The notes under the pieces are model-generated. The model worked only from the letters and a program-made list of their open reading frames with translations, made no database searches and had not been told where the DNA came from. Shown piece after piece: positions 363-64,000 of a stretch of DNA of 64,000 nt. Numbering within the stretch: the stretch's first letter is position 1; the number at the start of each line of letters is the position of its first letter. The DNA comes from Gracilinanus agilis (Eukaryota): the NCBI RefSeq assembly GCF_016433145.1, contig NC_058132.1:598380339-598444338 (forward strand). The letters are read 5' to 3'. Both the position numbers and the translations under genes were made by a program.

Positions 363-448
363 TCCATATATATATTCACAAGAGGACCAGGAGAAAAGTT
401 ATGGTGGTTCTAAAGTTTTTTTTTTAAATAAGAGTTCTAAAGTTTTTT

Positions 449-671
449 TTAATTTTAATTAATTAAAGAATTTTTTTTAATTCTTTCCTTCCACCTTAGA
501 ATCAATATTGTGTATTGGTTCCAAGGCAGAAGAGTGGTAAGGGCTAGGCAATGGGGATTAAGTGACTTACCCATGGTCACATAGCTAGAAAGTAGCTGAG
601 GTCAAATTTGAACCCAGGACCTCCCATCTCTAAGCTTGTCTCTCAATCCACTGAGCCACCTAGCTGCCTCC
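449..671 (-). mobile_element. SINE1_Mdo-type tRNA-derived SINE
   Basis: Reverse complement of ggcagctaggtggctcagtggattgag...ccttaccactcttctgccttggaaccaat; flanking direct repeat ctaaagtttttt. Confidence 0.9.
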
Positions 672-1602
672 CTAAAGTTTTTTAAAGTTGTTGTTTTTCT
701 TTACAACACCTTTATTACTGTAGAACACTCCATGATTATCTCCTAGCATTTCTCTGGGATGAAACCTTTTCTTATTTTTTATGGCACAACATTAAGGCTT
801 TCTGTTCATACACCACAATTTGTCCAGCCCTTGCCCAGTTGATGGACATCTCCTTATTTTCTAGGTTATGGCCACTTTGTGATACTTTGCTTCTATGTGA
901 TAAGATATCCATGACCAGTGATAAGATCCGTGCCCAATAGTGCCTTAAAGATATCAGGTGCTTTTAGTGTTTGTTGAATTTCTATACAGAAGATCCACAA
1001 TGAAAATCTAGTGGATATAGGTCTAGCATATTCTTGGTCCAGTGTTTTTGCTCACCTATGTCTGATCTATCCTCTGTTGGCATCAGCTCAAATTCTACTT
1101 CCTCTATGAAGGCTTCTTTGTTACAATTGGTAATAAATTTCCAACGCCTTTGGACCTCATATACCCCATCATACCGATCACTGACTCTCATAACATATTA
1201 TTTTATATTATACAATAATTATTGTATAGAAACCATATCATATCTCCCTACGAGACTACAAGCTCCATGAGGATAGATACCACAACTTACTTAATCTTTA
1301 TGCCTCTCCCTTAACATTTAGCATAATTCTCTACCTACAAAACTATGCTAATATCGTCAAACTGAAAGCTCAGAAGCCTAGGTCAAATATATAATAATAA
1401 TGCTAAAATGATGGAGGAATAAGGGTGATCATAATAGACAAGTTTTTAGCATCATTGAACTAATTGAACATGGTCCCCCATTTCTCACTACCTGTGGTCC
1501 TCCATCTTCTGACATCTTAAAGTTAATGACTCTGATTCCTTGATCCTGCCAATTACATCATTCTAATCATCATATGGTACAGAAGGCTTGGCCAAGACAC
1601 AA

Positions 1603-1961
1603 TGTAATCCTAACTGGATTGTGGAGTCAAAGAAACTTTCCTGGAACTTGAATGCCAGGTTGTTATAAAAACAAACCAAGACTGATCTATATGCTTTATG
1701 TGAAATTAGTCAAAGTCCAGGATAAAGACATGAGATTTTTGGGTGATCTCTAAGGGTTGTTGGTAGCTGCATAAAAGAAGCCAGCACCCCTGTCAATGGG
1801 AATGAGCATTCTCACTTTATCATGATACTGCATTCTTTCCAGATTAGTCTGAATACCTCCTTTAGTTCTCCAACCACAACACTGCTACTAATAAATCCTT
1901 TGAGAATGAATTTCCTTTCTAACTGCTGCATTTTAATTTAGTGTGCCTCTCTATACTGGCA
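1603..1961 (+). mobile_element. Possible solo LTR
   Basis: TG...CA ends, TATA-like gcataaaag near 1769, AATAAA near 1890, imperfect 4-bp flanks acaa/ataa; no second copy in the window. Confidence 0.3.
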
Positions 1962-2269
1962 ATAACTTAATAAATCATTCAAAATAGTGTAGACTGGTAT
2001 GAAATGGCCAGATAGGATTATTCTCACTAAGCAAAGCTGGAGTATCCTACATAATCACTAAGGCATATACCTAAGAGTATCTAATGTCTAGGGAAGCAAA
2101 AGGACTGAGTCTCTCCTACTTGATAACAGAATTATTTTTAATGCCCTAACTGGTCCCAAATTAGAAATGACTTTAAAGTGATTCCCCTTGTTCTCTGCTT
2201 ATACTCTGGACCTTCTCTGGTATAGAGGAGGAATTTGGAGTTGCTGATTACTGAGGACTGTTATACCAT

Positions 2270-2545
2270 AGTAAAGACATTATGGAAAAAAATAACTTTG
2301 AAAAACTTTAGAGCTCTGCTTGAAGTAATGAACTGCCATAATTCTAAAAGAATGATGATGAAACATGTTACCCACCTTCTGACAGAAGATGAACTGAGAT
2401 ACAGAATGAAAATGACATTTTTATATGTGGCCAACCCAGGAATTTGTTTTGCTTGACTTATTCATATTTGTTACAAGAGTTTTCTTTTTCAACTGGTGAG
2501 GGAAGGGATAGAAGGCTGAAAATAAATGTTAATTAAAAAAAAGTT
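2270..2545 (+). mobile_element. Old marsupial L1 3' end fragment
   Basis: Same family as 50-225, with more upstream L1-like sequence; ends aataaatgttaattaaaaaaaa. Confidence 0.6.
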
Positions 2546-2662
2546 TTATAGAAGGATTTGAGCATGGGCATTCTTCATCCCACCCCCATTCCCACTCTAT
2601 ATACATACACAAAACTCTAAAGAGGACCAGGAGGAAAAGAAGAGAATTACAGACAGGAAATA

Positions 2663-2663
<1 letters not shown>

Positions 2664-2706
<43 letters not shown>
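2664..2706. repeat. (CA)n microsatellite
   Basis: Perfect CA run. Confidence 0.98.
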
Positions 2707-2708
<2 letters not shown>

Positions 2709-2866
2709 TTTTCCTTCCCCAAGAGATGTTTCTGACATCTCTGAAGGAACCAAAGTGAACTCCTCTGTTCGTAGACAGCTAATCAACATTCCATTTAGCA
2801 AACATTGATTAATCACCCACTACATGCAAAATATCTGTGAGATATTGATACAAAAGAAGGGACTAT

Positions 2867-3154
2867 TGTGTAATTAATTTCTGCACCCTAGAACTCCAAT
2901 TCCAAGCATCCCATGTTCCTTCTCACATTACATGATGACATAGGGAGGATATAAGTTTGGTGTAGCCTCTAGCTTTCTCTTCCCTTGATAGCATTTTGTA
3001 GAGGTGGTGTGAGGCAAGTGGCAGGAGAATTTACTCATGTGTGATGTTATTTTTGTTAGATAATTAGGTTTTTATTCCTTCTACTTCAAGTGATTATTAA
3101 TAAAATTTATAAAATCAATACTTGGAGTTATTAGACATTAATCTAAATCTTACA
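2867..3154 (+). mobile_element. Solo ERV LTR (family A)
   Basis: tgtgtaatt...aatcttaca (TG...CA), exact 4-bp TSD ctat, TATA-like gggaggatataag, AATAAA; homologous to 20560-20852. Confidence 0.85.
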
Positions 3155-5208
3155 CTATCTAAAGTCTCTACCTATCGAATGGCCACCTGCTTCCAAGGCA
3201 AGCTGGAGCAAAACCTGGATTTACTGTGATTGTGAAATACCTATTTATGGGGACCAAGAAGTGAAGGACCATGTGTCCCATTGTGTTGTTACTAACTTCT
3301 TTCAGGATCTTCATGATTCTAGTATACTGTGACTGGACTGACAGGTGTGTCTGCCTAAGAGACTTCCCTTCTTTCTTTCTCCCTTCGTTCATCAGTAGTC
3401 CCTCATTTAATCCTAACCCCTTGCCAGTGTCGGTACTCACAGCTACGTGTTTTAGATTTTTTTTAGTACATTTGACAGTCATTTTAGTTAATGATATGTT
3501 CATACCGTAAGTCTTTTTTCTCATTCCTGGAATATATTCCTTTGTCTTCTATTACATGTCTATCTCTGGTTCCTAAATTTCAGACAATGAAGTGTGACCA
3601 AATGCATCCTCTTTGTTAAAAGTGGTGTTACTATGCTAATATCAGCCCCATACTTGTAGCCCTTGAGACCTCATGTTACTTAAGGCCAACATCTAAAACA
3701 CCTTAAAAATATCAAGGAAAGGGACTGACCTGCAAAAACTGTTGTAGGGCATTTCAGAAACTGCCTCTTGAAAATTCAAGGCATTAACACTACAGCACAT
3801 CTGATCTTAACAGCCATTGCCCATGCTCCCTAGTTGCCACATGGGAATGGCTGCTTTTAAGCAGCAATCTTTATTTCTAGGCACATTAATGTCCCAAAGC
3901 AATGAAGTCCGTGCCCTGTCTGATGGGAGTAGAGATTTAGACTGTTGCTTCATGATAAACCTTGTTCCACATGTCCTTTGTCTCACTCTTATTTAAAAAA
4001 AAAAACACGACAAAACTGGATTGCCTATAATAATCCTCAGTGCATGTTTCTTTGGAAGGTAGGAGGCATGAGCTGAAATGGGAATATTCAGGATAAAAAG
4101 AATATCTTCAATAACTCACAGCTAAATATTGGACTGACAATGAATGCTCTTAGCCTAGATACTAGCAACTAGTCAATAGATGGATATTTGGGGTTGGGTT
4201 TTACCTGGAGGGGAGGATGGAAAATGATATTGAACTCCTTGCCACTGAAAATGGAGGGGAGAGAATGCAGGTGAATGCAAACAGTGCATCATTCTGAGTC
4301 CAACCAGGTGGTCCATAGACTTTACTGACTGCTCTTTGATCATGATCCTTTGATGATTGCTCTTAGGGGCTTCAGCCACCTGTGAAGTCATTGACAGAGA
4401 ACAAATAGCTGGAGGAGAGTAGAGAAAATTAATTGTTACTTTAAAAAAAAAGGAGGAAAAATGGAATCAAATTCAATAATTGCCATGCTGAGTTCCCGTA
4501 GGGATTATGAATGCTGGCTGGCCATATGGCTTCATTGAGATGCCACTAAGACCATGATAAAAAAAAAAAAAAAAACCTTTTGCTAACTGTATGGAGAAGG
4601 CAGCTGCCTCCCAGAGTCCACTTTGAAACACAGCTAACAATGTCCCAAAGAAGAAGGACAGTTTCATTGGTGTTTTGGGGTGATTCTTTTATAGATTCAA
4701 ACCATCAGGCTTTGCCCTGAGGAATTTTAGTCCTCAAAATATGGGACTAACCAACAACAGGACTAACTCAGGAATTTTGGTGCTGATTTTTTCACCAGAC
4801 TGACAGAGCATGGGACCTGGTATAAGGAATCACATTATTGAAATGAAGAAATCTGTTGTTCTCCCTAGCTATTTTAAAATGCAGTGTGGAAGAGTGGATA
4901 GAGTATTGGAATTGGAGTCAGGAACACCTGGATTCAAATCCTGCCTCGGATTCTTTAATAACAGTGTGATCATGGGAAAATCATTAAACCTCTCTATGTC
5001 TGAGTTTACTCATCTCTGAAAGGAGGAGGTTGAACTAGATACCCATTAAGGTCCCTTTTAGCTCCAAATCTATGCCCACAGTTACCTAATTGCATATAAA
5101 ATTATCAACCTCACTGATTTTGATAGATCTTTGCTCTCATCTCTAGATTTTTCCTTATACCATACCCTATACCCATTCATGCTTTGTCCTCCTGTATGAT
5201 GCTTTTTT

Positions 5209-5701
5209 AAAATATTTTATTTTTTAGAAAAATTTTCCATGGTTACATGATTCATGTTTTTACTTTCTCCTTCACCCCCCCTTAACCCTTACCAATAGCT
5301 GACATGCATTTCCACTGGTTTTAACATGTGTCATCAATCAAGACTTATTTCCATATTATTGATAGTTGCATTGGTGTGGTCATTTAGAGTCTACATTCCC
5401 AATCATCTCCGCATCAACCCATGTGTTGCAGCAGTTGTTTTTCTTCTGTTTTTCCATTCCTGTAGTTCTTCCTCTGAATGTGGAGAGCATTCTTTTCCAT
5501 AGATCCCTCAGAATTGTCCTGGGTCATTGCATTGCTGCTAGTACAGAAGTCCATTACATTCAATTTTACCACAGTGTATCAGTCTCTGTGTACAATGTTC
5601 TCTTGGTTCTGCTCCTTTCCCTCTGCATCAATTCCTGGAGGTCATTCCAGTTCACATGGACCCTCCAGTTTATTATTCCTTTGAGCACAATAGTATTCCA
5701 T
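5209..5701 (-). mobile_element. 5'-truncated L1_Mdo-type 3' end
   Basis: Typical opossum L1 3' UTR in reverse with T-tract; ~17-bp TSD ctgtatgatgctttttt (5192-5208) / ctgtgtgatgctttttt (5702-5718). Confidence 0.92.
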
Positions 5702-5872
5702 CTGTGTGATGCTTTTTTGGTATCTTCCAAAAGTCCTTTAGAAAGCATCTACTTAATAGCCTACAGTCCCGATTTTTATAAATATATTTTGAAAACCAAT
5801 ATGCCATGACACTTAGGTATCTCCCCAATAATATTTCCCTCTTGCTACATACTAGCCTACCATTTTTTGGTC

Positions 5873-6157
5873 CTTTATTTATTTTGAGATTGGGCAAAAA
5901 GTACAGTGCTTACACATAGGCCTGATCACTTTGCTGATTCTGACAGAAGTTTTGATTTGCTCCATTTCCCACCCAAATCAGTCACACTCTCCTTAAGCAG
6001 CCTGATGCCCCACCTCCTCCCAGAGGCCGAACATCTTGATGTCAAGTTTAGTGCAGATACCCTTTTATAAATCACAACTTCTCAACTCAAGAGATCCATC
6101 AGCCTCAGCATCCCCAAAAGACAGAACTATGAAAGTGTGCAGTCACCACATGTGGTC
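5873..6157 (-). pseudogene. Decayed 7SL (SRP) RNA retrocopy retaining both Alu and S domains
   Basis: Minus strand matches 7SL collinearly: gctgaggctgatggatctcttgag; gggtatctgcactaaacttgacatcaagatg; caggctgcttaaggag; ggaaatggagcaaatcaaaactt; gcactgtact; then an A-rich tail. Confidence 0.85.
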
Positions 6158-6957
6158 AAATCTGCCATTTCCCTTGATGCCCTTTACACAACTTCATAGA
6201 CTCACAGAGTGAAGAGTTAAAAGGACCCTCAGAAGCCATCTAGTTCAATGCAAGTTATAATCACATGATATACATACTCTCTGTCTTTCCATTGCATAGG
6301 TTTCATCTATATTTTTTATTCTTCGAAAGCTGTGGTTTTCCATGATTCAAAGGGACTTTCTTGTTCTTTTTTTTTTGTATCCCCAGCACTTAGCACAGTG
6401 TCCAGCACAGAGAAGAGTTTTTTAAAATGTATATTGACTGGGGTGGAGCCAAGATAGTGGCTTAGCAAAAAAATGTATATCAATTGTGGCCATATAACAT
6501 TTCTAGGAGAACATGCTCATAAAAGTTATTTTCTACTAGCATGGAGAATGCTTTTTACAAACCCAATAAAAATGAATTCTCTACAGATGTTGAGGCTTCC
6601 AGATAACCTTGTTTGTAGGGGACATTATGCAGAAAGCATCAGATCCCTAACAGGAGTGTGATATGGGGGGAGTAGACTAGGTGATCTCTGAGGTTTTTTT
6701 AGCTCTAGATCTATGATCTGATCTTCTTAATAGGATCCATGGTCACTTACAAGATATTAGCCTAATTATTCAGATAGGAAAACCAAAGTGGGTAAAATAA
6801 TGTATGGTGTTCAGATTTTAACATGGAGACAAAGCAACAGCCTACTGCATTCATTTGTCACTCCTTGTTTCATAAATAGGCACTGCAATAATATGAATTA
6901 AAGGATAATGATTTAGACTCACTTTTGAATAGGAGGAGAGTGGATTGGAAAGCATTT

Positions 6958-7187
6958 GGGAAATTGGTGATGTAGTGGATAGAGACAAAAAGACCTGAGT
7001 TCAAATCTGGCTTCAGACACTTACTAGTGGTATGACCCTAGGCAAGACACAACCCTATTTGCTGCAGTTTCTTCATTTGTAAAATGAGATGGAGAAGGAA
7101 ATGGCAAACCATTCTAGTAGTTTTGCCAAGAAAATCCAAGATAGGGTCAGGAAGAGCTAGACATGACTGAAACCACTGAACAACATC
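6958..7187 (+). mobile_element. MAR1-type CORE-SINE
   Basis: CORE segment plus RTE/BovB-like tail gaaggaaatggcaaacca...ttgccaagaaaa...actgaacaac. Confidence 0.85.
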
Positions 7188-7249
7188 AAACAGGTTTTTC
7201 TATGCACTCCCCACTGTAGCTCTTCTAAACTTTTTTGTTTGCTTGCTTA

Positions 7250-7478
7250 GGGTAACTTTTGTGGTGCTGGGGACAGAGTGCTGGGTCTGGGATCAGGAAG
7301 AGTTGAGTTCAAATCTGACCTCAGACACTTACTAGAAGTCACTTAACCCTGTCTCTTTCAGTTTTTTCTTCTGTAAAATGAGCTAGAGAAGGAAATGGCA
7401 AACCACTCCAGTATCTTTTCCAAGAAAACCACAAACACAGTCATAAAGAGTTGGATATGACAGAAAAAAACAACACTT
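7250..7478 (+). mobile_element. MAR1-type CORE-SINE
   Basis: Same head, CORE and aaggaaatggcaaaccactccagtatc tail. Confidence 0.85.
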
Positions 7479-8299
7479 TCAGGGGTCACAAACTACTTTC
7501 TATTATAAAAGGCTATCTTTTTAAAACAATAAGCCCTTATACCTATATTTAAGTAGTTGGCCGGAAAGTATGAACTACTACAAGAATGGGAAACAAAGGA
7601 GAAGGTTGTGTTTTCAAGGTTATTAGCAGCCAAAAGACTACAACCCCTGGGTGTAGCAAAGAAAGCAGGAATCCTAAAATTTCAACAAAGGATGCCCTTT
7701 CCATTTTCTTACCATTGATCTATCTACCTTCTTTGATTACCACTATAATAGAACATTATGAAATGGGAAACTATCCTTCAATATTTCATTGAATATTAGA
7801 GTTAGAAGGAACCTTAAAAATCTTATTACTGATTTTTAACCTAATTTCTTACAGGTAAGGAAAGTATGACATCTTTTGGTTACATGATGTCCTGAGACAA
7901 AGGAAAAGAATTCAGATCTCCAAAATCTTATCCTAGTGTTCTTTCCTTTATTACACTATACATTTGGCTACACTTTGATAATTTCATTCAACATTTTGTA
8001 TGGAGGTGGTGTTGAAATTTTCCCCCTAGATGTTTCCATAAGATACAGATTAGTTACTTTTAAACTGAATGATTGATTCTGTCCAATTTGTCTCAAAAGT
8101 GCCCTGATTGGTGGGTGCTTTATACAGCCCACTATATCTAGCCAGCTTTAGTCATACTTCACTTTTTTCCAACTCTGGAACTATAATCAAATCAACACTT
8201 CCAAGGGTGTGTCAATCTACTTCTCTAAGACTCTATTCACCCTGTTCCTGTGATTTTTAAAACTAAAATACCCCTCCCTATCTCAATTGAAATAGGAAA

Positions 8300-9060
8300 G
8301 TCTTAAGAAGATATCGGTTGAAAAATAAATATAATGAGTTCCATTTTGGTATGGTAAGTTTTAAGATGCTAGTGGAGCATCCAAGTGAAGACATCTAGAA
8401 GGCAGTTGGTGATATGGAACTGGAATTCTAGAGTGATTAAGGCTAGGAGCTACATAGATGGGGATGATAATTTAACCCAGAGAAACTGAGGAGCACACCA
8501 AAAGGGAGAATGTGGAGAGAAGAAAAAAGGGCTTAGGCAAAACACTGATTGAATTTTGTATTTAGTGGCCATGAGAAAGATGATCATAGGAGGAAAAGAA
8601 GATAAATTTACACCAAGAAGACCAGATCTGGGAGAGGCCAGATAGTCAACCCCCCTCATTTTACAGATAAGTAATTTGCCCAAGGTCACAGAGGCAGTAA
8701 ATTTCACAGTTTGAATTGTAACCTGGGTCCTCTGATTCCAAACCCCAGCCAGGCTTTCCACTAACCCATGCTGCCTCTTAAGCAATGGATGATGAAGCAA
8801 TGGAGCACTAGAGATTACAAAGGGATGGTCAATAAGTCCTAGAAGAAGAACGAGTGAGCAATGTTTTAAAACCAAGGAAAGAGAGAGTATGCATAACGGT
8901 GTTGTGGGTCAATAAAGTTGAATGAGGACCAAGAATAATATAGTTTATTCGAGGAAGAGAGGAGTTTTAGCAGGATGGCGGCATTGAAAGTCAGATAGCA
9001 AGGGATTAAAAATCATTGTGTGAGAGGTAAAGAACTGGAGGCAAAGAATGTATCCCTTTC
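8300..9060 (-). mobile_element. L2 relic interrupted by a MIR (~8590-8780)
   Basis: Purine-rich pattern typical of antisense L2 (gcatccaagtgaagacatctagaaggcagttgg...); MIR core ctcattttacagat...aaggtcaca. Confidence 0.6.
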
Positions 9061-10804
9061 TCTGCCAAGGTCAGAAAAGCTGACTAGAAAAATCTAATCC
9101 ATTGTATCTGGATCCCATTCATTTCTGCTTGAGTCATGGAGAACTAACCATAAATAGTTTACCCAATAGTCAGACTATTCCCTTGTACTTATCCTGATGG
9201 CTATTTGTGACTGGAATTACTTAAAGATTTCGCCTAATTATAGGAGTCATTATTCTAACCTTCTAACTCCTGAGGAAGGAGGGTAAGAAGCTACTGGAAG
9301 TACTTAGTAATAAGTGACATGCTCTCCAGAGTAGTTCAATTGTCAAATTAAAAAACATGCAGGAAAATTTATACTTTTCACTATTGATAGATGTCCATTG
9401 TTGGAGAATAAATCTTGCAATTATGGCTCCCCGCATCAAACATTCTTGGAGGAAACAGTGATTACTAACAGTAAAATTATAAGATATTTGATTGTTAAGG
9501 ACCCATAATTAGTAGAAGGGGAAGAAAGGAAGTAATATTGTCAAAAAAGCATTAAAAGACTTACATTTAGGGTTTGATATCTCACTTGATCTTTGATGTT
9601 TTATTTTTGTAGATCTGCCACAACATTTAAAGAAGATCCATCCCCCCTCCCAAAGACTGGCAGGTTAAAGCTCTAAACTGGATGGTCTGATTTGGCTTTT
9701 CCTTGTCTTCCTCCTGGAAGACAGCCAGAGATCCTCCTTTCTCAGGAAAGGGCAATCCCTCTGAATAGCTAAAAGCTGGAAACCTGCCATGTATGGCTGT
9801 CGCATTAATTTAATTTTACCGGCAACAATAAAGGAAGGGGGGTGGTCAGTGCCCGGGATCCAGACATAATGATGGGCACACTAAAATGGATTATTTTTTC
9901 CTGCTTTTTTCCAGTCCTCCTCCCTACTCTTAAATAATAAATAATGAAATCGAGGAGCCCTCCATACCAAGATAGTAGCCACCTATTTACCAGAGATTCT
10001 AGTGACAAATATATTCCAAATGGTTCATAGATGGTACATGCAAATACTTCACTGTTAATTAAGCCTGAGAAAGAATCATAAAAGCATAGACTCATAGACT
10101 TAAAGCCAGAAGGGAATCATAATGACCATCAAATCAAATCATCTTTTTACAGATAAGGAAAGCAAGGTACAGAGAGATTAGTGACTTGCCCAAAGTCATG
10201 CAACTAATGTCTGATTTAAGCCAAGATCTTCCTAACTGCAAATCCAGTACCCTCTACTACCCCAATTTAGTCATTGATTTTGCCATATAGGTCTGTGGAC
10301 TTATGCAGAAGTGTTATATATCAGGTAACCTCAAGTTTTCTCAAAACAAGCTTTCTTTTGAGACTTTTAAAAAAAAATATTGTTTTCCTGATTTCCCTTT
10401 GGTTTTTAAGCAATGCTTCTTCTTCTTCTTCTGTACCTTTAAGCATGCCGTCTTATTTCTGAGGAGGACCAGACACACCTCTATAGAGTTCTCCCTCCTG
10501 TATTCCTTCCTTCTCTTTTTTCTAGCTGTCCTCTCTTTTCTCCCAAACCCAGAGATGGTTGTTATGGTTGTGAAAACAAGAGACTTACCAGGATGTTTTG
10601 GAGACAAAGCCGAAATATCACATCTCATCCCACCCACTCATCCCTCACTTTGAGTTCATATTTAATTGTACCTACAGAAGTCATAACTCATTTGCCCATA
10701 TAATGGCAGGTCACAGAGGCAGTGTAGGCAAGGAGGCAGAGATAAGTTAGACCCTAACCTTTGACTAGACATACAGTCCAAGGAAACCAATGACAAAAAA
10801 AAAA

Positions 10805-11155
10805 AAAAGCCTTGTGTACCCAAAAATATTTATAGTGGCATTTCTTGTTGTATCAAAAAATTGCATATCATAAAGATACCTATCAATGGGTGAATGGCTA
10901 AACAAACTGTGGTATATGAATGTAATGTAGGAGTGTGCTGGTAAATATTCAACAGCTAGCTCCCTGGAAGAGGAGGGAGAGGAAATGTATCCATGACACA
11001 CTTTTAAGTTTAATCTGCTTGCTTACCATCTCAAGGGTGGGGGTATGATTAAAGGGAAAGGGAGGGAGAGAATTTGGGACTCAAATTTTTTCTTTAAATG
11101 TTGAAAATTGTTTTTATGTATAATTAGAGGAAAATTAAATTAGAGTAAAAAAATA
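10805..11155 (+). mobile_element. Old L1 ORF2 C-terminus / 3' UTR fragment
   Basis: aaaatatttatagtggc...cctatcaatgggtgaatggctaaacaaactgtggtatatgaatgtaatg, then G-rich tract and A tail. Confidence 0.75.
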
Positions 11156-19455: not shown

Positions 19456-20196
19456 TGTCGTGAAATAATTTTCCCTTAGGTCAACTTAAGTCAAGGCTGA
19501 GGCTATACTCAATTTCTCCCCCCACCGGTATGAAAATGGTTTGGGATCTGCTGTCTTTGTAAAGGATAAAAGAATTGAAGGTAGGGCTCACTAGCCATGT
19601 TGAGCTCATTTAAAGTATAGTGGTTCGGCGGCAGCTGGGTGGTTCATTGGATTGAGAGTCAGGCCCAGAGACAGGAGGTGGTGGGTTCAGATCTGGCCTC
19701 AGACACTTCCTAACCAACTTCCTAGATATATGACCCTGGGCAAGTCACTTAACCCCCATTGCCTAGCCCTTACCACTCTTCTGCCTTAGAACCAATACCC
19801 ATTATCTATTATAAGATGGAAGGTAAGGGTTTTAAAAAATAAAAAAATATATAAAAAATTAATAATAAAGTACAATGGTTCAGCCACATGGAAAATGTTC
19901 TAGTGTCTTCCAGGTCACAGCAAAGATGCTCCCCTCTTGTGATGAAGTAATAAGTGAAGAGTTGGGGTCTCTAAGTCCACCTCCTCTGTGGCTATTTGCC
20001 AATCAGAGATGTCTTGGGATGATCAGGAGAGGGACTGGATGCTGAGTTCACCAGGGATATAGAGAGTTGTGCTAAAGGAGGGGAGGTCTTTGGGGATTGT
20101 GATGAGACAACTGAGCAGATTAAGATGTCTTGACCAGTCAATTAATAAATTAATTTAAAATTAAGAAATACTATCTCAAGAATTTCAGTTGTAACA
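19456..20196 (+). mobile_element. Solo LTR (family B) with an internal SINE1 insertion
   Basis: tgtcgtg...ttgtaaca (TG...CA), exact 4-bp TSD atat, CCAAT box, AATAAA near the 3' end. Confidence 0.75.
19627..19866 (+). mobile_element. SINE1_Mdo-type SINE
   Basis: Full length; TSD aaagtatagtggttc/aaagtacaatggttc. Confidence 0.95.
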
Positions 20197-29865: not shown

Positions 29866-30070
29866 CAGTGATGGGAAAACTACAGCCCACAGGCCAGATG
29901 TGGGCCCCCTGAAATGTTCTATCCTGATGCCTGACATTATTCCTAATCTGATGAATACAATGAGTAGGACACAATACAATGAAACTTTGAAAGAGTTGCC
30001 TTAGAAACAGACTGACAGATGAGCATTTCCTTTCCTTTGGCCCCCTCTTTAAAAAGTTTGCCCATCACTG
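29866..30070. mobile_element. hAT MITE (family CAGTGATGGGCAAACT), 205 bp
   Basis: TIRs cagtgatgggaaaact / agtttgcccatcactg; TSD ccctagag/ccctagac; homologous to 59182-59370. Confidence 0.93.
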
Positions 30071-32248
30071 CCCTAGACTAACAATATTTTTTGGAGAGGG
30101 AGATAAAAATATTTCTAGTTCAGTTTTACTCTCTTAGGAGAGCAGAATATCCAGCCTTATGGCTCCCATCTCCTGCCCTTCTCCTAATGAGAGTCAATCT
30201 CATTTGCAGATGAGTAGAAGATTCCAGAAGTAATTATTAATAATTCCCTGCATTCAGACAAACCCATGTGGACAAATGTATAATCTATGTAAGTAACAAG
30301 CACACCTTAAACTAGGGTTGTCCAGAGCTATATACTATGTTTCAGAAGTGGTCTGACCAGAGTAAACTATAACAAAGCTATCACTTCCTTATTCTTCAAA
30401 GCTACATAAGTTTAACAAATTGCTTGTTGGATTGGACTGGACTGAATTGGATTGGATGTTGGACTGCATCCAAGACCCATAGCTGGGAAAAGTCAGAAAA
30501 AAATTTCTCATAAAAATCAAAGTCTTAATAATTTTCTTCAATGCAATGCTTCATAATTTATGATGTTCTTTCTTTGCATCATCCTCTTGAGGTAGCTAAT
30601 ACATGTAATATTACCACCATTTTATAGATGGAGAAACTAAGGCTTCTGGAAGCTAAATGATTTGCCCTAACAAGTAAGGATTAAGGGCAACACTCAATTC
30701 CCATGTATGCTAAGTTCAGGTCTCATGTATTTTCCTCTTATGTTACACTTCTTGTCATGGAAACCCATTCCATAGGCTTCTTCTTTCCTGATGAAATCTC
30801 AACAATCCCTTTCAGAAAAGCGGTTACTTTGAAGCTCTTAAGTGATATTTAATCACAACAGTTTAACCTGTTTCACAATTACTCCTCCATTTCTATATAA
30901 ACCCTGACAAAGTCTATAGGACTCTCAAGGAAAGTACGGGCAAGCAAAGGGAGAAGTCATTTTTCTCTAGCCAAGAATCTGGAGAATTTTTCTTTTCTTA
31001 ATAGAATCATATGAAGTTTAAAAAAATTACAAACTCCTCCAAGATGATTTTTATCTCCTAAATTAAAACCACCATAGAAGGAGAGCCCACAAAGTGGGCA
31101 AAGAGCCTGATTTAGGGGGGTGGCTTCCATATCATTAAATTCATATGCTTTTAATTTGAAAGCAAAGCTTATTCTTGAAAGGAAATAAGCAGGACCTAAA
31201 AGAATTCAACATATAAAAATATGCATTCTGGGGTTTGCATTTAATAGCTGGGTGTTGCCTGATTTTATTAGACTGACCAGCTCAAATCTGGCAGTAGTTT
31301 AAAGTCCATAGGGGGTAAATGGAGGGAATAGGCATGTGCATAGGGAATGTATTTGAAAGACTGCTTAGTTTACACACATCTTTGTGAAACTGTGATATCA
31401 CTGATATGTATACTCCCTCTAAAGGTGTAAATCACAAGCAACCTATGCCTTTTCATAATGTTTGACTTTCATGCATGATCACCAAAAAAATCCTTTTTTG
31501 GGGTGGGGAGTCCACACAACATTCTAGAGACCTTCCTTTAGATCTCTTGATTTTGAACTTCAATAACTGGAGTACATAGGCAATTGTCTGTCAGCTACCC
31601 TTTACTCTATGTACATGATCAAATCTACCTTCTTTTCTAGTCTACATCTATCCAATGACACACATTATTTAATTTTGAATCACAATTCTACATTAGTTTA
31701 ATTGGTTTTTATGAAGTGAATAGTCTGCATCAGGCTTTGGCCCAGATTCTGGGGATAGAAATACAAAAAATAAAAAAATACATATCCCATACCTAAAAGG
31801 GTTTATGATCTACTTTCAGTCTAGAAACATTCTGTGTCACAGTTCTGGGTTATAGGTCCAGAGTCGAGTGGAGTGCTTGTGATCAGTCACAAAGGGAGCA
31901 GGGGCTCTAGTCACAGTTCCATGGCAAAAAAGAGTACTAGGGCTTATAGTTTCAGGAGAACAGGAACCTAGTTATAGTCCTAGGGCTAAGAGGAGGACTA
32001 GTACTTTCAACTACAGGGGAGCAGAAGCCCTTCCTGGGTAAAGACCAGAGTATAGACCAGGAGAGCAGTGAAGCTATCTTTCCCCAGGTCATACCACTTT
32101 GGAGGGAGTAAAAACTTGCAGATCTCCAGAACTAGCTCTGAAAACAGTAGCATGAAAAAAGTCTGAGGTTTGGGACAGTGCTTTCCCATCTCTAGATGAA
32201 CAGAACTCAATTTTGACATAAAATTCAAAGTCAAGAAATGGTTTAAGA

Positions 32249-32432
32249 CAGTGATGGGCAAACTATTCCCCGTAGGCCAGATCCAGGCCATAGTTTGCCC
32301 ATCACTGCCTTAAGCAATTCTCCAATAGATTGATCTGGATGTGGAGGTGTAGTGATTAGGGATTTGCTTAAGGCAGTGATGGGAAAACTAAGTCCTGCAT
32401 CTGGCCCACAGGGAATAGTTTGCCCATCACTG
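32249..32432. mobile_element. Composite of two inverted 59-bp hAT mini-MITEs around a 66-bp spacer
   Basis: Units 32249-32307 and 32374-32432, each with 16-17-bp TIRs; exact outer TSD gtttaaga (32241-32248, 32433-32440). Confidence 0.9.
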
Positions 32433-32917
32433 GTTTAAGAGAATGAGCAAACAATAAAAAATACCTTCATCATAAAAAAATTACTATCGTGGCAGGGAAC
32501 ACTAGACAAAAGCATGAAAACACTTATAAGCAGTCAAAGAAAGGTACTAATTGGAACCAAGCCAAACAAAAATTCCTAGAAGAGCTAAAGAGATGAGAGT
32601 AGTAGAGGAAAAACTTGAAAAGAAATGAGAGCCATGTAAGAAAACTATGGACAGAGGATTAACAGTTTGATAAAAGAGGCACACACACAAAAAATAATGA
32701 AGAAAATACCTCAAAAATTAGAAGGTGACTAATGGTAAAAGAGGAATAAAAATTCATTGATGAAAAGAATCTCTTTAGAAGCAGAATAGGCTAAATGGAA
32801 ATGAAGTTTTCAAATTCAATGAAGAAAAGAATTTCTTAAAAAGCAAAATTGGCCTAATGGAAAAAAGGTGATATTAAAGCTCACTGAAGAACATAGTATA
32901 TTAAAAATTAGAATCAA

Positions 32918-33096
32918 GGGGGCAGCTGGGTAGCTCAGTGGATTGAGAGTCAGGCCTAGAGATGGGAGGTCCTAGGTTCAAATCTGGCCTCAGACACTTC
33001 CCAGCTGTGTGACCCTGTTCAAGTCACTTGACCTCCATTGCCCATCCTTACCACTCTTCCACCTAGGAGCCAATACACAGAAGTTAAGGGTTTAAA
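32918..33096 (+). mobile_element. Young SINE1_Mdo-type SINE (short-tail variant) inside L1 ORF1
   Basis: TSD aaaattagaatcaa on both sides. Confidence 0.95.
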
Positions 33097-33367: not shown

Positions 33368-33590
33368 GGGAGCAACTAGGTGGCTCCATGGATTGAGGGC
33401 CAGGCTCAGAGATGGAAGATACTCCGTTCAAATGTGGCCTCAGACACTTCCTAACCATGTGACCCTGGGCAAGTCACTTAATATCCATTGTGTTGCCCTT
33501 ACTACTCTTCTACCTTGGAGCCAAGTACAGAGTTCAAGGAATGGAGTATTGATTTTAAGATGAAAGGTAAGTGTTTTTTTTTTTAAGAGA
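33368..33590 (+). mobile_element. SINE1_Mdo-type SINE inside L1 ORF1
   Basis: Full head and tail; the L1 resumes after it. Confidence 0.9.
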
Positions 33591-36449
33591 ATCCATTGAT
33601 CACTTGAAAGAGATGCCCCAAATGGAAACTTTATAGCCAAATTTCAGAGCTCCTGGGCCAAGATAAAATATCGCAAGCAGCCAGAAAGAAGCAATTGAAA
33701 TATCATGGAGCAACAGTCAGGATCACACAATATTTATCTGCTCCCATATTAAAGGAATGTAGCACTTAGATATTCTGGAAGGCAAGGGAGCTAGAATTAC
33801 AACCAAAAATAGTTTGCCTAGCAAAGTTAGTAAAATCCTTTAAGGAGAACAGAGATATTTAATGAAATGGAGGACTTTCAACCTTTTCAATGAAAAGACT
33901 AAAGTTGAACAGAAAATTTTAATTTCAAATACAAGACTCAAGAAACATAAAAAGGTAAACATGAAAGAGTAATCATAGAGGACTCTTTACAAGTAAACTC
34001 TTTATATTTCTATATGGGAAGATGATACATGTAGCTTCTAATAATTTAATTGTTATTAGGGTAGTTAAAAGCAGTATACATAGAGGGCATGGGTATGAAT
34101 TGATTATGTTGAGATGATTTTTAAAAAAGTGAAGGGGCGATAAAGAAAGGAGGCATTGGAAGAAGGGAGAAGGAAGAGACAGAATGAAGAAAATTTTTTC
34201 ACATAAAAGAGTCATGTGAGTAAGAACTTTTATAATGGAGGGGGAAATGAGAAGAAGGTATCAGGCAATGCTTGAACCTTACTCTCATCAGTATTGATTC
34301 AAATAGGGAAGAATATATACACTATTATTTATATGATAAATAGAAGAAAATAGGATGAAGGTAAATATACATTTAGTAAGTATAACTTTGAATGGGAATG
34401 GGAAGTATTCATCTATAAAATGGAAGCAGATAGAAGATGGCTTAGAAACCAGAATCCAAAAATATATTGTATTTAAGGACACAGTTGAAATAGAAAGATA
34501 CATTTAGTTAATAAAGGACTAGAACAGAATCTCTTATACTTTAGCTGAAGTTAAAAAGGCAGTAAGAACAATCATGATTATAAACAAAGCAAAAGCAAAA
34601 AAAGACCAAATTAAGAGATAATCAGGAAAGCTATATTTTGAGAAAAGATATGTAGAAAATGAAGAAAAAAAAATTTACAGCAAGTTTTTCTAATAATGAT
34701 TTTTTGTCAAATACATTGAGAACTGAGTCAAGTTTGTAAAAATGGGAACCATGCTGCAATTCATAAATGGTCAAAATATATGAACAGGCAATTTCCAAAA
34801 GAAAAAAATCAAAGATATTTATAATTATATAAAAATGCTCTAAATCATTATAGACTAGAGAAATACAAATTAAAACAATTCTGAGGTACTATTCCACACT
34901 AACAGAAATGACAAATACTGTAGAGGAAAAGGGAAAATAGATACACTAATAAACTGATGGTGAGTATGAACTATTTCCATCATTCTGGAGAAAAATTTGG
35001 AAATATACCCAAAGGACCATAAAACCCTTTGGGGGGAATTTTTGGGATAATATCATCACTAGGTTCATGGTCCAAAGAGATCAAAGAAAAAGGGGAAGGA
35101 TCCATGTGTACAAAAATATTCATGAGTTTTTTTTTGAGGTGGCAAAGAATTAAAAGTTGAGGAGATACTCATCAATTGGGAAATAGCTGAACAAGTTGTG
35201 GTATATGATCATGCTGGGGTATTATCGTGCTCTGGGAAATGACAATGGAGAATGGTTTGAGGAAATAAAAAACATAGCAAGACCTATATGAATTGATGCA
35301 AAATAAAATGAGAAGAACCAGGAGATCATCATACACAGTAACAACAATGTTATAATGATGATCAACTGTGAAAGACATGGATACTCTGATCAATACAGTG
35401 AACCAAGACAGTTCCAAAGGACTCATGATAGAAACATGCTAACCACCTCCAGAAAGAAAGAAATGAAGTCTGAATGCAAACTGAAGTATAATTTTCTCAC
35501 TTTATTATTATAATTTTTTTACAATATGGCTAATGTGGAAATACATTTTGCATGATCTCATATGTATAACTGATATCAATTTGCTTGCCTTTTCAGTGAG
35601 TGGGAAGAAGAGTGGGAGGGAGGGAGAGAATATAGAACTCAATTTAAAAAGAAAAGAATGTAAAAATAAATAAATTGCGAATTAAAAAATAAAAATGGTA
35701 ATCATTTTTTTAAAAGTTTACAGTCTATTGAGGGAAGAGGGAAGGTAGAAGGGAAAGGGGAAACAATGTGCATGCAGATGAGTAAATACAAAATACATAC
35801 AAAACAAAATAAATTAGAGGTAGCTAGGTAGAGAATTGAGCACTGAACCTGGAGTCAGGAAGAGGTTTAAATGTGACTCGCATACTTACCAGTTGAGTGA
35901 CCCTAAGCAAGCCACTTAGTCACTGCCTTCCTTAATTTCCTCATATGCAAAATAGGAATAATAATGGTCCCCATCTCCCAGAGTTGTGAGTCTAGTGAAA
36001 TATTTGTAAAGTGCTTTGCAAGCCTGTAAATAATAACAACTCTTTAAATTGCTAGCTATAAAATCATTATTCTTATTAATAATAATATTTGAGTAAAGTT
36101 AAGCATTAACAGTTTGGGGATCAGTAAAGGTCTTATGTAGTTAATGATATATAAGTTGAATGTTGGAGGGAGCTAGGGATTCCAGTAAGGAAAGTGAGAA
36201 AATAGGAAATGCTACATTTTGGAAAGGGAACCAAAATATGGCCAGTTTTAGTGTGACTAATATATGAAATTAGAGTGGAAATAGGGTATGAAACATATTG
36301 TGAAGGGCAGTGAATGAGAAACAGAAGACTTTTATTAATCTTAAAGGAAATAGGGAACTATTGAAGCTTCTAATAATATAATGTAGCTGAATCTCACTCA
36401 CTATGCACCTCTCCTCTCCAATGTCCTTTGAGTGACTCAATTTTGATTA

Positions 36450-47994: not shown

Positions 47995-48395
47995 AACAAA
48001 AATATATTAAAACCCTTACCTTTGGGGAAGCTAGGTAACTCAGTGGATTGAGAGTCAGGCCCAGAGAATGGAGGTCCTAGGTTCAAATATGGCCTCAGAC
48101 ACTTCCTAGCTGTGTGACCCTGGGCAAGTCACTTAGACTTCATTGCCTAGTCCTTACCCCTCTTCTGCCTTGGAACCAATATGCAGTATTGATTCCAAGA
48201 AGGAAGGTAAGGATTTAAAAAATAAAAAATAAAAAAATAAAAAAAACCAAACCTTACCTCCTGTTTTGGAAAGAGTATTGTGTATTGGTTCCAAGGCAGA
48301 AGAGCAATAAGGTTGAGGGAGTTAAGTACCTTTCCAAGGGTCATAAAGCTAGTAAGTGTCTGAGTCTACATTTGAATTCGGATCTTCCTGACAAC
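47995..48395. mobile_element. Sense SINE1 (48023-48250) nested in the tail of an antisense SINE1
   Basis: Duplicated aaac(c)cttacct flanks the inner copy. Confidence 0.8.
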
Positions 48396-53149: not shown

Positions 53150-53321
53150 CTTTTTATTTTAAATCCTTGTCTTCTGACAGAAGATTGGTAAGGGCTAGGC
53201 AGTGGGGATTAAGTGACTTGCCCAGGGTCACACAGCTAGGAAGTGTCTGAGGCCATATTTGAACCTAGAACCTCCTATTTCTGGTCTTGGCTCTCTATCC
53301 ACTGAGCCACCTAGTTGCCCC
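53150..53321 (-). mobile_element. SINE1_Mdo-type SINE
   Basis: gtaagggctaggcagtggggattaagtgacttgcccagggtcacacagctagg...ccacctagttgcccc. Confidence 0.9.
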
Positions 53322-57538: not shown

Positions 57539-58462
57539 ACAATATAAGTTGTTTATGTATAATTTATATAACTATAAAACATATACAAATATAAAAATAA
57601 AAGAATAAAAAAAGAAGAATCCAACCAATTTTTAAAAATACAGTTAAGTCAGCCAAAATTACCCAGTTCAAAGGCTTGAAATCTAACATAAACTGTGTAG
57701 ACATAAATAGGGGAATATATGGGCAGATGAAAGGAAGAGTCCTGGAGACCAGAAGATAGAATATTATAAAGAGAAATAAAAATAGGAAACATTACTTAAA
57801 GAAATATGGAATAATATAAATAGAGGCCCTAATCCAGCTGACTGTAAATCCCTTTTCCTTAATTGGTTTAGAAACTGAGGGCTGTAATGTGAGACTGAGA
57901 GCTCTCAGCTGCTATTCTACTGAGCTGCCTAGAATCCCATTAAGTGGAAGACAATAGCAGAGCTGACAGCTCCCTTTCTGTAGGGGCACTTAGAGCTAAT
58001 CTGCTATTGAGACTAATACAATTATATGGGATTAGAGGATTGCCATTGATACATAGATTTGGAGATTCCCAAAGGAGGGGAAAGTTGGGGTTTTGCATAT
58101 TGGGGAGGGCCAAGAGAGGGATTGTAAAGACTACAAAACTCCTATTTATTCAAAGACCAAGAAAAATGATCATACTTTAGCATATGGGTCTGCATCTCAG
58201 CAATGATCCCAAATCTGAACCAAATAGTTGGGATGGAATTCCTTAAATACTTTCTTCTCTATTTAACTTCTTCTTAACATAAAGCTTTACAAAGGCACTC
58301 AGAAATCTCTGTGCAGAGGTATTTATTTCAAATAATTATTTATTTAGGCCTTTTTTTAATCCAGGGTTTTGAGAGCAAGAAGAACCTTATTTTTCATAGT
58401 AACAGGTGACTTTAATGATTAGTATTAGTGTTATTGTTGTTACGCTTCAAAAGACTATGTAA

Positions 58463-58647
58463 GGGGGCAGCTGGGGTAGCTCAGTGGATTGAGAGCCAGG
58501 CCTAGAGGTGGGAGGCCCTGGGTTCAAATGTGACCTCAGACACTTCCTAGCTGTGTGACCATGGGCAAGTCACTTGACCCCCATTGCCTACCCTTACCAC
58601 TCTTCTGACTCCAAGATGGAAGGTAAGGGTTATTAAAAAAAAAAAAA
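58463..58647 (+). mobile_element. Young SINE1_Mdo-type SINE
   Basis: TSD aaaagactatgta. Confidence 0.95.
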
Positions 58648-58863: not shown

Positions 58864-59575
58864 TGTGGTGGGGGACTTGAGGTGAACCCACTGGGGGTAG
58901 GAAGGGTATCCTTTGCAAGAAAGCAAGACTCTGAAACTTAGCTTAAAAATAAAAAGAGAAATTTATTAATTTAGAAGGTAATGTTGAATCCATCCAGGAG
59001 GACAGCATAGATGGAAAGCTGCCTCCTAGAGGACCTCAAGTCTGGGGTCTTTATACCCTTTACAACAGTTAATATGTGGCTTCTGGATGGTATGCCTGAG
59101 GCACAGGGGGTGGTGGTGGAAGGTCTGCCTGAAGACAGGGGGTAACCCTCATAGTTTATGGGACAGATAGATGTCTTAGATCAGTGATTGGATAACTATG
59201 GCTTGTGGGCCAGATGTTCTATCCAGCCACATGACATTATTCCTAATCTGACAAATACAATGAGTAGGATACAATACAATGAAACTTCAAAAGAATTGCC
59301 TTAGAAACAGACTGACAGATGAGCATTTCCTTTCCTTTGGCCCCCTCTTTTAAAAGTTTGCCCATCACTGTCTTAGATACAACCTGATGGCATCAAGGCA
59401 TAGCCTGAAGGTATATCTCTGTGTCCACCTCAAATCTAAAGCACAATCCAAGGAGAATATTCCTCTCAGAGTTTTAGAAGTCACAAGGATGTAAGGGAGC
59501 AATGGAATTTTCCTGCCCACAGTTTAGCCTGAAATACTCCTATAATTTGGGGGTACAATGTTCCATACCATACCC
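58864..59575 (-). mobile_element. Solo LTR (family C) interrupted by a hAT MITE
   Basis: tgtggtgggggacttgaggtg...aaaaataaaaagagaaatttatt...ctttataccc; antisense AATAAA and TATA. Confidence 0.7.
59182..59370. mobile_element. hAT MITE (same family as 29866)
   Basis: cagtgattggataact / agtttgcccatcactg; exact TSD tcttagat. Confidence 0.93.
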
Positions 59576-59713: not shown

Positions 59714-59912
59714 AGGGGCAGCTGGGTAGCTCAGTGGATTGAGAGCCAGGCCTAGAGATGAGAGGACCTAAGTTCAAATCTGGCCTCAGACACTTCCCAG
59801 TCGTGTGACCCTGGGCAAGTCACTTGACCCCCATTGCCTACCCTTACCACTCTTCTGCCTTGGAGCCAATACCCAGTATTGACTCCAAGATGGAAGGTAA
59901 GGGTTTAAAAAA
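59714..59912 (+). mobile_element. Young SINE1_Mdo-type SINE
   Basis: TSD aaatctgtgttagag/aaattgtgttagag. Confidence 0.95.
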
Positions 59913-63744: not shown

Positions 63745-63967
63745 TTTCTTCTTTTTTAAAAAAACCCTCACCTTCTGCCTTGGAGCCAAGGCTCCAAGGC
63801 AGAAGAGTGGTAAGGGCTAGGCAATGGGGGGGTGGGGGTGGAGAGGGGGAGTGTCAAGTGACTTGCCCAGGGTCAAACAGCTAGGAAGTGTCTGAGGTCA
63901 AATTTGAACCTAGGACCTCCAGTCTCTAGGCCTGGCTCTCAATCCACTGAGCTACCCAGCTGCCCCC
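63745..63967 (-). mobile_element. Young SINE1_Mdo-type SINE with an internal G-rich insertion
   Basis: TSD tctttctttaattctt; ends gagctacccagctgcccc. Confidence 0.93.
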
Positions 63968-64000
63968 TCTTTCTTTAATTCTTAACAAGTTTAGGGGCTG

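What the first reader, a model, noticed from the sequence alone, without database searches (positions are those of the whole stretch)
32241..32440. Composite transposon built from two inverted 59-bp hAT mini-MITEs with one outer TSD
Seen: unit 1 (32249-32307) and unit 2 (32374-32432) are each a complete 59-bp TIR element (cagtgatggg[c/a]aaacta...tagtttgcccatcactg). They are reverse complements of each other with about 7 mismatches. Neither unit has its own TSD. The exact 8-bp repeat gtttaaga flanks the whole 184 bp, while the inner flanks are inverted copies (ccttaagcaa...ttgcttaagg) around ~46 bp of unrelated DNA. The block sits 2 bp before the ORF1 ATG of a dead L1. Known: hAT insertions make 8-bp TSDs and hairpin the donor flank, and Ac/Ds ends can pair in alternative ways. 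Inference: a tiny deletion derivative of the 29866/59182 family was duplicated in inverted orientation with its old target site, then moved as a cargo-carrying unit using the outer ends. This would be a bacterial-style composite transposon in miniature in a mammal.
Basis: partly seen in the sequence, partly recalled or inferred. Interest (0 to 1): 0.72.

Follow-up and report, generated by a model that had tools for sequence, protein, structure and literature searches.

The report
Four-ended fold-back hAT MITE copy
This 184-base palindrome is one old copy of a very abundant, lineage-specific mini "jumping gene" (a hAT MITE) that carries four transposon ends instead of two; it landed here as a single piece, so the layout belongs to the family and this copy is ordinary.

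Summary
An exact 8-bp direct repeat (gtttaaga) flanks 184 bp made of two 59-bp units in inverted orientation (6 mismatches) around a 66-bp spacer. The inverted repeat runs 19 bp into the spacer on each side. The whole is therefore a hairpin with 78-nt arms and a 28-nt loop (DNA fold z = -15).

It is not a one-off composite. In contigs of the run that holds this locus, summed depth over the units and inner arms is about 10^5, against 25-30 for single-copy DNA. In that run, 270 and 199 contigs lose homology exactly at the two outer ends, into unrelated flanks. No comparable break is listed at the inner ends. Three runs of two other organisms share the flanking L1-like repeat but lack the element. 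Paralogous copies of the host repeat carry 9-10 nt where this locus has 202, which is the size of an empty site.

The spacer is a family feature, not cargo, and the inverted duplication happened once in a founder, not here.

Both ends of each 59-bp unit look like the parent's 5' end. This hints at two nested fold-back duplications.

The scan had already found this family on other DNA of the same genome.

The parts
32241..32248 (.). left copy of the 8-bp target-site duplication (gtttaaga)
   Evidence: identical to 32433-32440
32249..32307 (+). unit 1, 59 bp; outer TIR 32249-32265, inner TIR 32291-32307
   Evidence: homology of 270 contigs starts at 32249
32308..32326 (.). left inner arm of the palindrome; its first 8 nt (ccttaagc) may be a relic target site
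   Evidence: 16/19 complementary to 32355-32373; mean depth of the 32303-32333 bin about 116,000 although depth has fallen to about 1,900 at 32323 and about 400 at 32329, so its first ~20 nt are inferred to be at roughly the 10^5 level
32327..32354 (.). 28-nt non-palindromic loop, the least conserved part of the family
   Evidence: depth about 400 to 11,000 at 32329-32345, 10-56 contigs; no similarity to the parent family or to the rest of the window
32355..32373 (.). right inner arm of the palindrome
   Evidence: depth 181,293 in 102 contigs at 32363, where the family's majority letter (A) restores pairing with the left arm
32374..32432 (-). unit 2, 59 bp, reverse complement of unit 1 (6 mismatches); inner TIR 32374-32390, outer TIR 32416-32432
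   Evidence: homology of 199 contigs ends at 32432
32433..32440 (.). right copy of the 8-bp target-site duplication
29866..30070 (+). 205-bp copy of the parent-type hAT MITE family (TSD ccctagag/ccctagac, 7/8)
59182..59370 (+). 189-bp copy of the parent-type hAT MITE family (TSD tcttagat, 8/8)
31993..32240 (+). host interspersed repeat (L1-like 5' region) upstream of the insertion
   Evidence: summed depth of thousands in all four runs of three organisms
32441..32916 (+). host repeat downstream of the insertion; ATG at 32443, stop after 4 codons; interrupted by a SINE from 32917

Best explanation
The block is one decayed copy of a high-copy, lineage-specific, non-autonomous hAT element with a fold-back layout. 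It has two inverted 59-bp mini-units, each with both TIRs, joined by a partly palindromic 66-bp spacer.

Shown: this copy was inserted as a single 184-bp piece into an L1-like repeat, 2 bp upstream of the repeat's first ATG, and it duplicated the 8-bp target GTTTAAGA. The family's homology ends at the outermost TIRs.

Inferred: a hAT transposase supplied in trans by an autonomous relative with the same TIRs cut at the two outer ends, and the inner ends were passengers. The architecture arose once in a founder copy by inverted duplication (fold-back or template-switch repair) of a mini-unit together with about 33 bp of its right flank, including its old target site. That four-ended product then amplified.

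The mini-unit itself looks like an earlier head-to-head duplication of the parent's 5' end. The duplication would centre on the parent's 12-bp subterminal palindrome GGCCCGCGGGCC.

The copy is now inert. Its arms are 88% complementary, it is about 80% identical to the listed sister copies, and it has no coding capacity.
For: Structure and TSD. Hairpin of -68.3 kcal/mol, z = -15.

Family status:
- In run X9, which holds the locus (0.85 of its words; single-copy contigs at depth 16-30), bin-mean summed depth is 56,000-320,000 across 32241-32457. It is 181,293 in 102 contigs at 32363, in the inner arm.
- 270 contigs have loose ends before 32249 and 199 behind 32432. Median loose length is 255 nt and consensus agreement only 0.42-0.44, so the flanks are unrelated.
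- The contigs that break at 32395/32398 continue with agreement 0.67-0.71 into the parent family.
- No break at 32307/32308 or 32373/32374 is among the best-supported loose ends.
- Records 29, 30 and 31 are other contigs that cross the spacer. Records 29 and 30 align without gaps at about 80% identity; record 31 has 4 gaps.
- The flank consensus next to both ends reads TCTAGA.

Empty site: paralogous host repeats in all four runs join 32239 to 32442 with 9-10 nt between them. One TSD copy plus its neighbours would give 10.

Lineage specificity: runs X8, X2 and X4 cover the flanks at thousands but cover the element at 0-30.

hAT type:
- The TIR starts CAGTG.
- 8-bp TSDs with central TA occur in two parent copies in the window and in 12 related MITEs from metagenome contigs.
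- The same target preference is reported for insect hAT MITEs (PMC3845634).

5'-type at all four unit ends: 6/9 against 2/9 at positions 17-25.
Against: - All runs were laid as contigs, not reads, so depth is not a copy number.
- Only three spanning contigs are listed, and I could not read the TSDs of other copies.
- The 28-nt loop is far less covered (about 400 to 11,000). The loop is therefore variable in the family, or this copy's loop is atypical.
- The absence of solo 59-bp units rests only on their not being among the top-ranked loose ends.
- No autonomous partner or transposase was identified.
- No orthologous empty site was seen, only paralogous ones, and their 9-10 nt match GGTTTAAGAG only loosely.
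- The founder-event mechanism and the 5'/5' origin of the unit are inference from a few diagnostic positions.
Confidence: 0.85

Rival explanations
1. The 59-bp 'units' were never independent transposons. The family is simply a hAT MITE with long (about 78-nt) terminal inverted repeats that happen to contain an internal palindrome, so the two inner 'ends' are by-products and there was no old target site.
For: No break at the inner junctions is among the best-supported loose ends, and depth stays near 180,000 across them. No solo unit occurs in the 64-kb window. Both ends of a unit are 5'-type, as a fold-back of one end would give.
Against: Each unit has complete 17-nt TIRs in the right orientation. 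The 8 nt just inside (CCTTAAGC) fit the family's target preference, with TA at positions 4-5. The listed loose ends are only the top few of about 1,850.
Confidence: 0.3
2. A unique composite formed and mobilised once. This is the reader's strong reading: a miniature bacterial-style composite transposon carrying unrelated cargo DNA.
For: Exact outer TSD and inverted inner flanks. The spacer matches nothing else in the window or in the parent family.
Against: The units plus inner arms are repeated at about 10^5 summed depth, with hundreds of different flanks. Other contigs span the spacer with the same length. The scan's earlier notes describe 176- to 196-bp copies elsewhere in the genome. The spacer has no gene, and the units have no transposase.
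Confidence: 0.03
3. Two independent insertions of a 59-bp MITE close together, or a local inverted duplication made at this locus after a single insertion.
For: The units' own flanks match 5/8 and 6/8, more than the roughly 2/8 expected by chance.
Against: - Those partial matches are explained by the shared target preference and the palindromic TTAA.
- Independent insertions would not give inverted inner flanks 19 nt long.
- A local inverted duplication would give inverted outer flanks, not direct ones.
- The same structure recurs elsewhere.
Confidence: 0.02
4. The element belongs to a TTAA-targeting superfamily (piggyBac-like), since TTAA lies near every junction.
For: TTAA lies 2 nt from each of the four unit ends.
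Against: - The direct repeat is 8 bp.
- The 2-nt linkers differ (GA, CC, GG, GT).
- Flank consensus over hundreds of copies is TCTAGA, not TTAA.
- Parent copies and their relatives have 8-bp TSDs without TTAA.
Confidence: 0.01

Closest known systems
hAT MITEs of animals (for example hAT1_NA/hAT2_NA of insects, PMC3845634; MER1/Charlie-type MITEs of mammals, from my own knowledge)
   Same: CAG-type TIRs (CAGTGAT...), an 8-bp TSD with TA at positions 4-5, about 200 bp in length, no coding capacity, high copy number, and ends shared with relatives in distant hosts.
   Different: This family has four TIRs and nested palindromes. Its interior is not a deletion remnant of a transposase gene.
Maize Ac/Ds 'double Ds' and Ac/Ds macrotransposons (PMC3260210)
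   Same: More than two hAT ends lie in one structure. The outermost pair can move everything between them as one unit, with one 8-bp TSD.
   Different: - Double Ds is one Ds inserted into another, and it breaks chromosomes. Nested Ds elements are thought to be selected against, and none was found in B73.
- Macrotransposons are kilobases long and are single events.
- Here the structure is 184 bp, symmetrical, and amplified to high copy number.
Bacterial composite transposons (IS-cargo-IS)
   Same: Two copies of a smaller TIR element in inverted orientation, mobilised by the outer ends.
   Different: The units encode no transposase, the 'cargo' is 66 bp with no gene and is mostly palindrome, and the structure is a fixed family consensus rather than an assembled module.
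Palindromic MITEs such as human MADE1, the source of mir-548 (PMC1784062, listed)
   Same: A near-perfect long hairpin when single-stranded, with weak look-alike hits to miRNA precursor models.
   Different: A different superfamily (mariner, TA target). No evidence here of transcription or small RNAs, and the Rfam scores are far below threshold.

Membership tests
hAT superfamily, non-autonomous (MITE) | 8-bp target-site duplication | tested here: met
   gtttaaga 8/8 here. Parent copies match 7/8 and 8/8. The 12 metagenome relatives match 7-8/8.
hAT superfamily, non-autonomous (MITE) | short TIRs of the YARNG type | tested here: met
   All ends start CAGTG, and the TIRs are 17 nt. The YARNG rule comes from my own knowledge.
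hAT superfamily, non-autonomous (MITE) | target preference with TA at positions 4-5 (nTCTAGAn-like) | tested here: met
   Flank consensus of 199-270 contigs reads TCTAGA. The preference is described in PMC3845634.
hAT superfamily, non-autonomous (MITE) | small, non-coding, high copy number | tested here: met
   184 bp. The only ORF of 80 aa or more overlapping it is a minus-strand one (32007-32291) that merely reaches into unit 1. Summed depth is about 10^5 against 25-30 for single-copy DNA.
hAT superfamily, non-autonomous (MITE) | an autonomous partner with the same ends that encodes a hAT transposase | not tested
   None is seen in the window or in the fetched loci, and no named family (SPIN, OC1, hAT1, ET) could be matched with the tools at hand.
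Composite transposon (IS-cargo-IS) | flanking units that are themselves complete, transposase-encoding elements | tested here: not met
   The units are 59 bp and have no ORF.
Composite transposon (IS-cargo-IS) | unrelated cargo between the units | tested here: not met
   38 of the 66 bp are palindrome arms repeated about as often as the units. The loop is 28 nt and holds no gene.
Composite transposon (IS-cargo-IS) | mobilisation as a whole by the outer ends, with a single TSD | tested here: met
   Outer TSD 8/8, and family homology ends at 32249 and 32432.
Drosophila Foldback (FB) elements | long TIRs built of tandem subrepeats, with a 9-bp TSD | tested here: not met
   The TSD is 8 bp, and the repeat finder shows no tandem subrepeats in the arms. 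The FB features come from my own knowledge.
miRNA precursor families (Rfam) | score at or above the family's gathering threshold | tested here: not met
   The best hit is MIR869 at 58.8 bits against a threshold of 330. The others score 20-31 against 69-89.

The most novel reading that the evidence does not exclude
The family records two successive fold-back duplications as a route by which MITEs are born. First, the parent's 5' end was copied head-to-head around its 12-bp subterminal palindrome to give a 59-bp two-ended unit. Then the unit and its flank were copied again to give a four-ended 184-bp element. This element reached high copy number in a mammal even though it has the end arrangement (as in double Ds) that is expected to break chromosomes and be selected against. 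If so, extra inward-facing ends may help rather than hinder recruitment of the transposase.
Probability: 0.3. Interest if true: 0.45.

Novelty: new member of a known kind. Interest (0 to 1): 0.25.

Why it matters
This copy does not matter in itself. It is an old, inert insertion in a dead repeat.

The family is a tidy natural example of how very small DNA transposons can be built by inverted duplication of an end plus flanking DNA. It also shows that a hAT element with four ends can amplify as a unit. That bears on how hAT transposases choose among several ends, and on the minimum substrate size for transposition.

The family also adds long, near-perfect hairpins to the genome at many sites. 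These are candidate sources of small RNAs or of fragile sites, but nothing here shows either.

I could not check Repbase or Dfam. A family this abundant in a well-annotated genome is probably already in a repeat library, which would remove the remaining novelty.

Tried and rejected
1. Confirming 'L1' by profile. Pfam on ten ATG-to-stop pieces and five stop-free pieces, and PDB sequence searches on two pieces, gave nothing significant. No second copy of this 5' region lies in the window.
2. Fetching other composite copies as readable DNA.
   - A unit-spacer-unit pattern in metagenome contigs gave 0 hits.
   - An inner-junction pattern in genome contigs gave 0 hits.
   - The parent's 5' end as a pattern in genome contigs also gave 0 hits.
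   - I therefore could not align family members or read their TSDs.
3. Origin of the spacer. Local alignment against the parent interiors, the metagenome MITEs and the rest of the window scored no better than shuffles.
4. Literature. No paper in the library holds the TIR string in a transposon context. Searches for opossum hAT MITEs, fold-back hAT MITEs and opossum hairpin miRNAs found only background. No description of this architecture was found, which is not proof that none exists.
5. The piggyBac/TTAA reading was rejected on TSD length and on the flank consensus.
6. Composite-like inverted repeats in five of the metagenome loci: none related.
7. Rfam gave only sub-threshold hairpin look-alikes.

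Full report
**What is there**

Between them are 184 bp:
- unit 1, 32249-32307;
- a 66-bp spacer, 32308-32373;
- unit 2, 32374-32432.

Each unit is 59 bp and has 17-nt terminal inverted repeats beginning CAGTGATGGG. Unit 1 and the reverse complement of unit 2 differ at 6 positions. An exact 8-mer match at the two flanks has a chance of about 2.4e-5 at this base composition.

One point needs correcting. The inverted symmetry continues 19 nt into the spacer on each side (16/19 complementary). The repeat finder reports one inverted repeat with 84-nt arms, 87% complementary, 28 nt apart. Four of those 84 nt are the palindromic TTAA inside the TSD. As single-stranded DNA the 200 nt fold into one long hairpin of -68.3 kcal/mol. 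Shuffled sequences average -22.4, giving z = -15.

**Relation to the longer family in the window**

The TIR occurs at two other loci in the window.
- 29866-30070 is 205 bp, with flanks ccctagag/ccctagac.
- 59182-59370 is 189 bp, with flanks tcttagat on both sides.

The units share the first ~34 nt and the last 17 nt with these copies and lack the interior.

**Is the 184-bp structure unique?**

One public run (X9, organism C) holds 0.85 of the sampled words of 31900-32800. Runs of two other organisms hold only a few per cent.

Results in X9:
- Contigs identical to the window have depth 16-30.
- Bin-mean summed depth over 32241-32457 is 56,000-320,000.
- At 32363, inside the right inner arm, depth is 181,293 in 102 contigs. 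The majority letter there (A) restores pairing with the left arm, so the palindrome is better in the family than in this copy.
- The best-supported places where contigs stop matching are 32249 (270 contigs) and 32432 (199 contigs). Their loose tails have a median length of 255 nt and agree with each other only 0.42-0.44, so the flanks are unrelated.
- The other two strong break points, 32395 and 32398, continue with agreement 0.67-0.71 into what is recognisably the parent family's next stretch.
- No break at the inner junctions is among the best-supported ones.
- Listed contigs 29, 30 and 31 come from elsewhere and cross the spacer. Contigs 29 and 30 align at about 80% identity without gaps.
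- The 28-nt loop is much less covered (about 400 at 32329-32332 and about 11,000 at 32345). It is therefore the variable part.

These are contigs, so the figures are not copy numbers. They still separate 'one locus' from 'very many loci' by three to four orders of magnitude.

**Did this copy insert as one piece?**

In all four runs some contigs of the host repeat join 32239 to 32442 with 9-10 other letters between them (tables 5 and 5c). This locus without the insert and with one TSD copy would have 10 letters there. The letters match only loosely, by 4 identities and 4 transitions in one variant. That is expected for old paralogues. The two TSD copies here are identical to each other, so the target had already diverged from the host-repeat consensus before the insertion. 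These are paralogous empty sites, not the orthologous one.

**Lineage**

The three runs of organisms A and B cover the host repeat at depths of thousands. Over 32241-32426 they have depth 0-30. The whole TIR family is therefore absent from them at 80% likeness, while the host repeat is shared.

**Superfamily**

A scan of metagenome contigs for the TIR pair at parent-type spacing found 12 contigs.
- Their elements are 195-212 bp long.
- They have the same first ~40 nt and the same 3' end as the parent copies in the window, and an unrelated interior.
- They have 8-bp TSDs matching 7-8 of 8, nearly all with TA at positions 4-5.
- One 8.7-kb contig has no ORF of 110 aa or more. This fits eukaryotic host DNA; I could not name the host.

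The flank consensus next to the ends of the composite family in X9 reads TCTAGA. A TA preference at positions 4-5 is reported for insect hAT MITEs with similar TIRs (PMC3845634). Opossum genomes are known to hold horizontally transferred hAT families that are shared with a blood-sucking bug (bioRxiv 10.1101/2024.01.22.576481). I could not link this TIR to any named family.

**Origin (inference)**

In all 11 orientable metagenome copies and in both window copies, the two ends of the parent differ from position 17 inward.
- The 5' end runs ...ACTA followed by CGGCCCGCGGGCC, which contains a perfect 12-bp palindrome.
- The 3' end, read inward, runs ...ACTT followed by a T-run.

All four ends of the two mini-units read ...ACTA. 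The 'other' end of each unit matches the 5' type at 6 of 9 positions 17-25, against 2 of 9 for the 3' type. Two of the mismatches are CpG transitions. The unit therefore looks like two 5' ends head-to-head rather than a plain internal deletion. This rests on few positions.

The composite repeats the same pattern one level up. The unit and about 33 nt of its right flank are copied in inverted orientation, and the first 8 nt of that flank (CCTTAAGC) look like a hAT target. Fold-back priming or template switching at a break is the simplest mechanism for both steps. Nothing here tests it. The spacer matches nothing else available.

**Comparison with what is known**

The element works like any hAT MITE: it is cut at the outer TIRs by a transposase supplied in trans. 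Its nearest named analogues are maize double Ds and the Ac/Ds macrotransposons. In those, outer hAT ends move everything between them, and nested arrangements are thought to be selected against because they break chromosomes (PMC3260210).

It fails two of the three defining features I listed for a bacterial composite transposon, because the units are not coding and there is no real cargo. It is not a Drosophila FB element, whose TSD is 9 bp and whose arms are built of tandem subrepeats. It reaches no Rfam miRNA threshold.

**Earlier notes of this scan**

Notes found describe 176- to 196-bp copies of the same four-ended architecture on other pieces of this genome. Follow-up agents called them ordinary copies of a very abundant family. 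I treated these notes as leads. One search tests the claim independently for this locus and agrees with it.

**Limits**

- I could not consult Repbase or Dfam.
- I could not read other copies' TSDs or count solo units.
- I could not see the orthologous site in a related species.
- The host repeat's identity as L1 rests on its copy number and on motifs I recognise in stop-free pieces, not on a profile hit.

**Verdict**

It is one ordinary copy of an abundant fold-back hAT MITE family, not a unique cargo-carrying composite.

Noticed in passing
L001-L012 (metagenome contigs; element coordinates): Twelve JGI metagenome contigs carry 195-212-bp MITEs with the same 17-nt TIRs, the same first ~40 nt and the same 3' end as the window's parent family, but an unrelated interior. 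All have 8-bp TSDs. Pairs L001/L002, L005/L008 and L006/L012 share a TSD, so they are probably the same locus seen in different samples. L012 (8.7 kb) has no ORF of 110 aa or more, which suggests eukaryotic host DNA.
   Followed up: partly
window 32917-33080 and 33368-33532: Two copies of a roughly 160-bp SINE-like repeat interrupt the host L1-like element. Relatives at 77-92% identity lie at 509-671, 19627-19801, 48024-48181, 53180-53321, 58461-58605, 59715-59876 and 63848-63968.
   Followed up: no
window 32241-32333, runs X2 and X4 (organism A): In the runs that otherwise lack the element, depth of 10-30 (about one contig) covers only the left third of the block and nothing over unit 2 (table 2). 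It may be one distant relative or a mis-laid contig. It remains unexplained.
   Followed up: no
L005:698-711 and the same position in the other metagenome copies: The 5' subterminal region of the relatives holds a perfect 12-bp palindrome, GGCCCGCGGGCC, followed by AGATGCGGCC. In the window's copies it is decayed at its CpGs. It is a plausible nucleation point for the fold-back that made the 59-bp unit.
   Followed up: partly
L012:1895-2004: An unrelated 54-nt inverted repeat, 94% complementary and 2 nt apart. It is another small palindromic element in the same metagenome contig.
   Followed up: no
window 9867-9883: A weak TIR-like match with 3 mismatches and no partner end nearby. It is probably chance.
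   Followed up: partly
window 33608-33766 and 34340-34504: Stop-free pieces that look to my eye like the C-terminal part of L1 ORF1 and the start of the L1 ORF2 endonuclease. Pfam and PDB sequence searches did not reach significance.
   Followed up: partly
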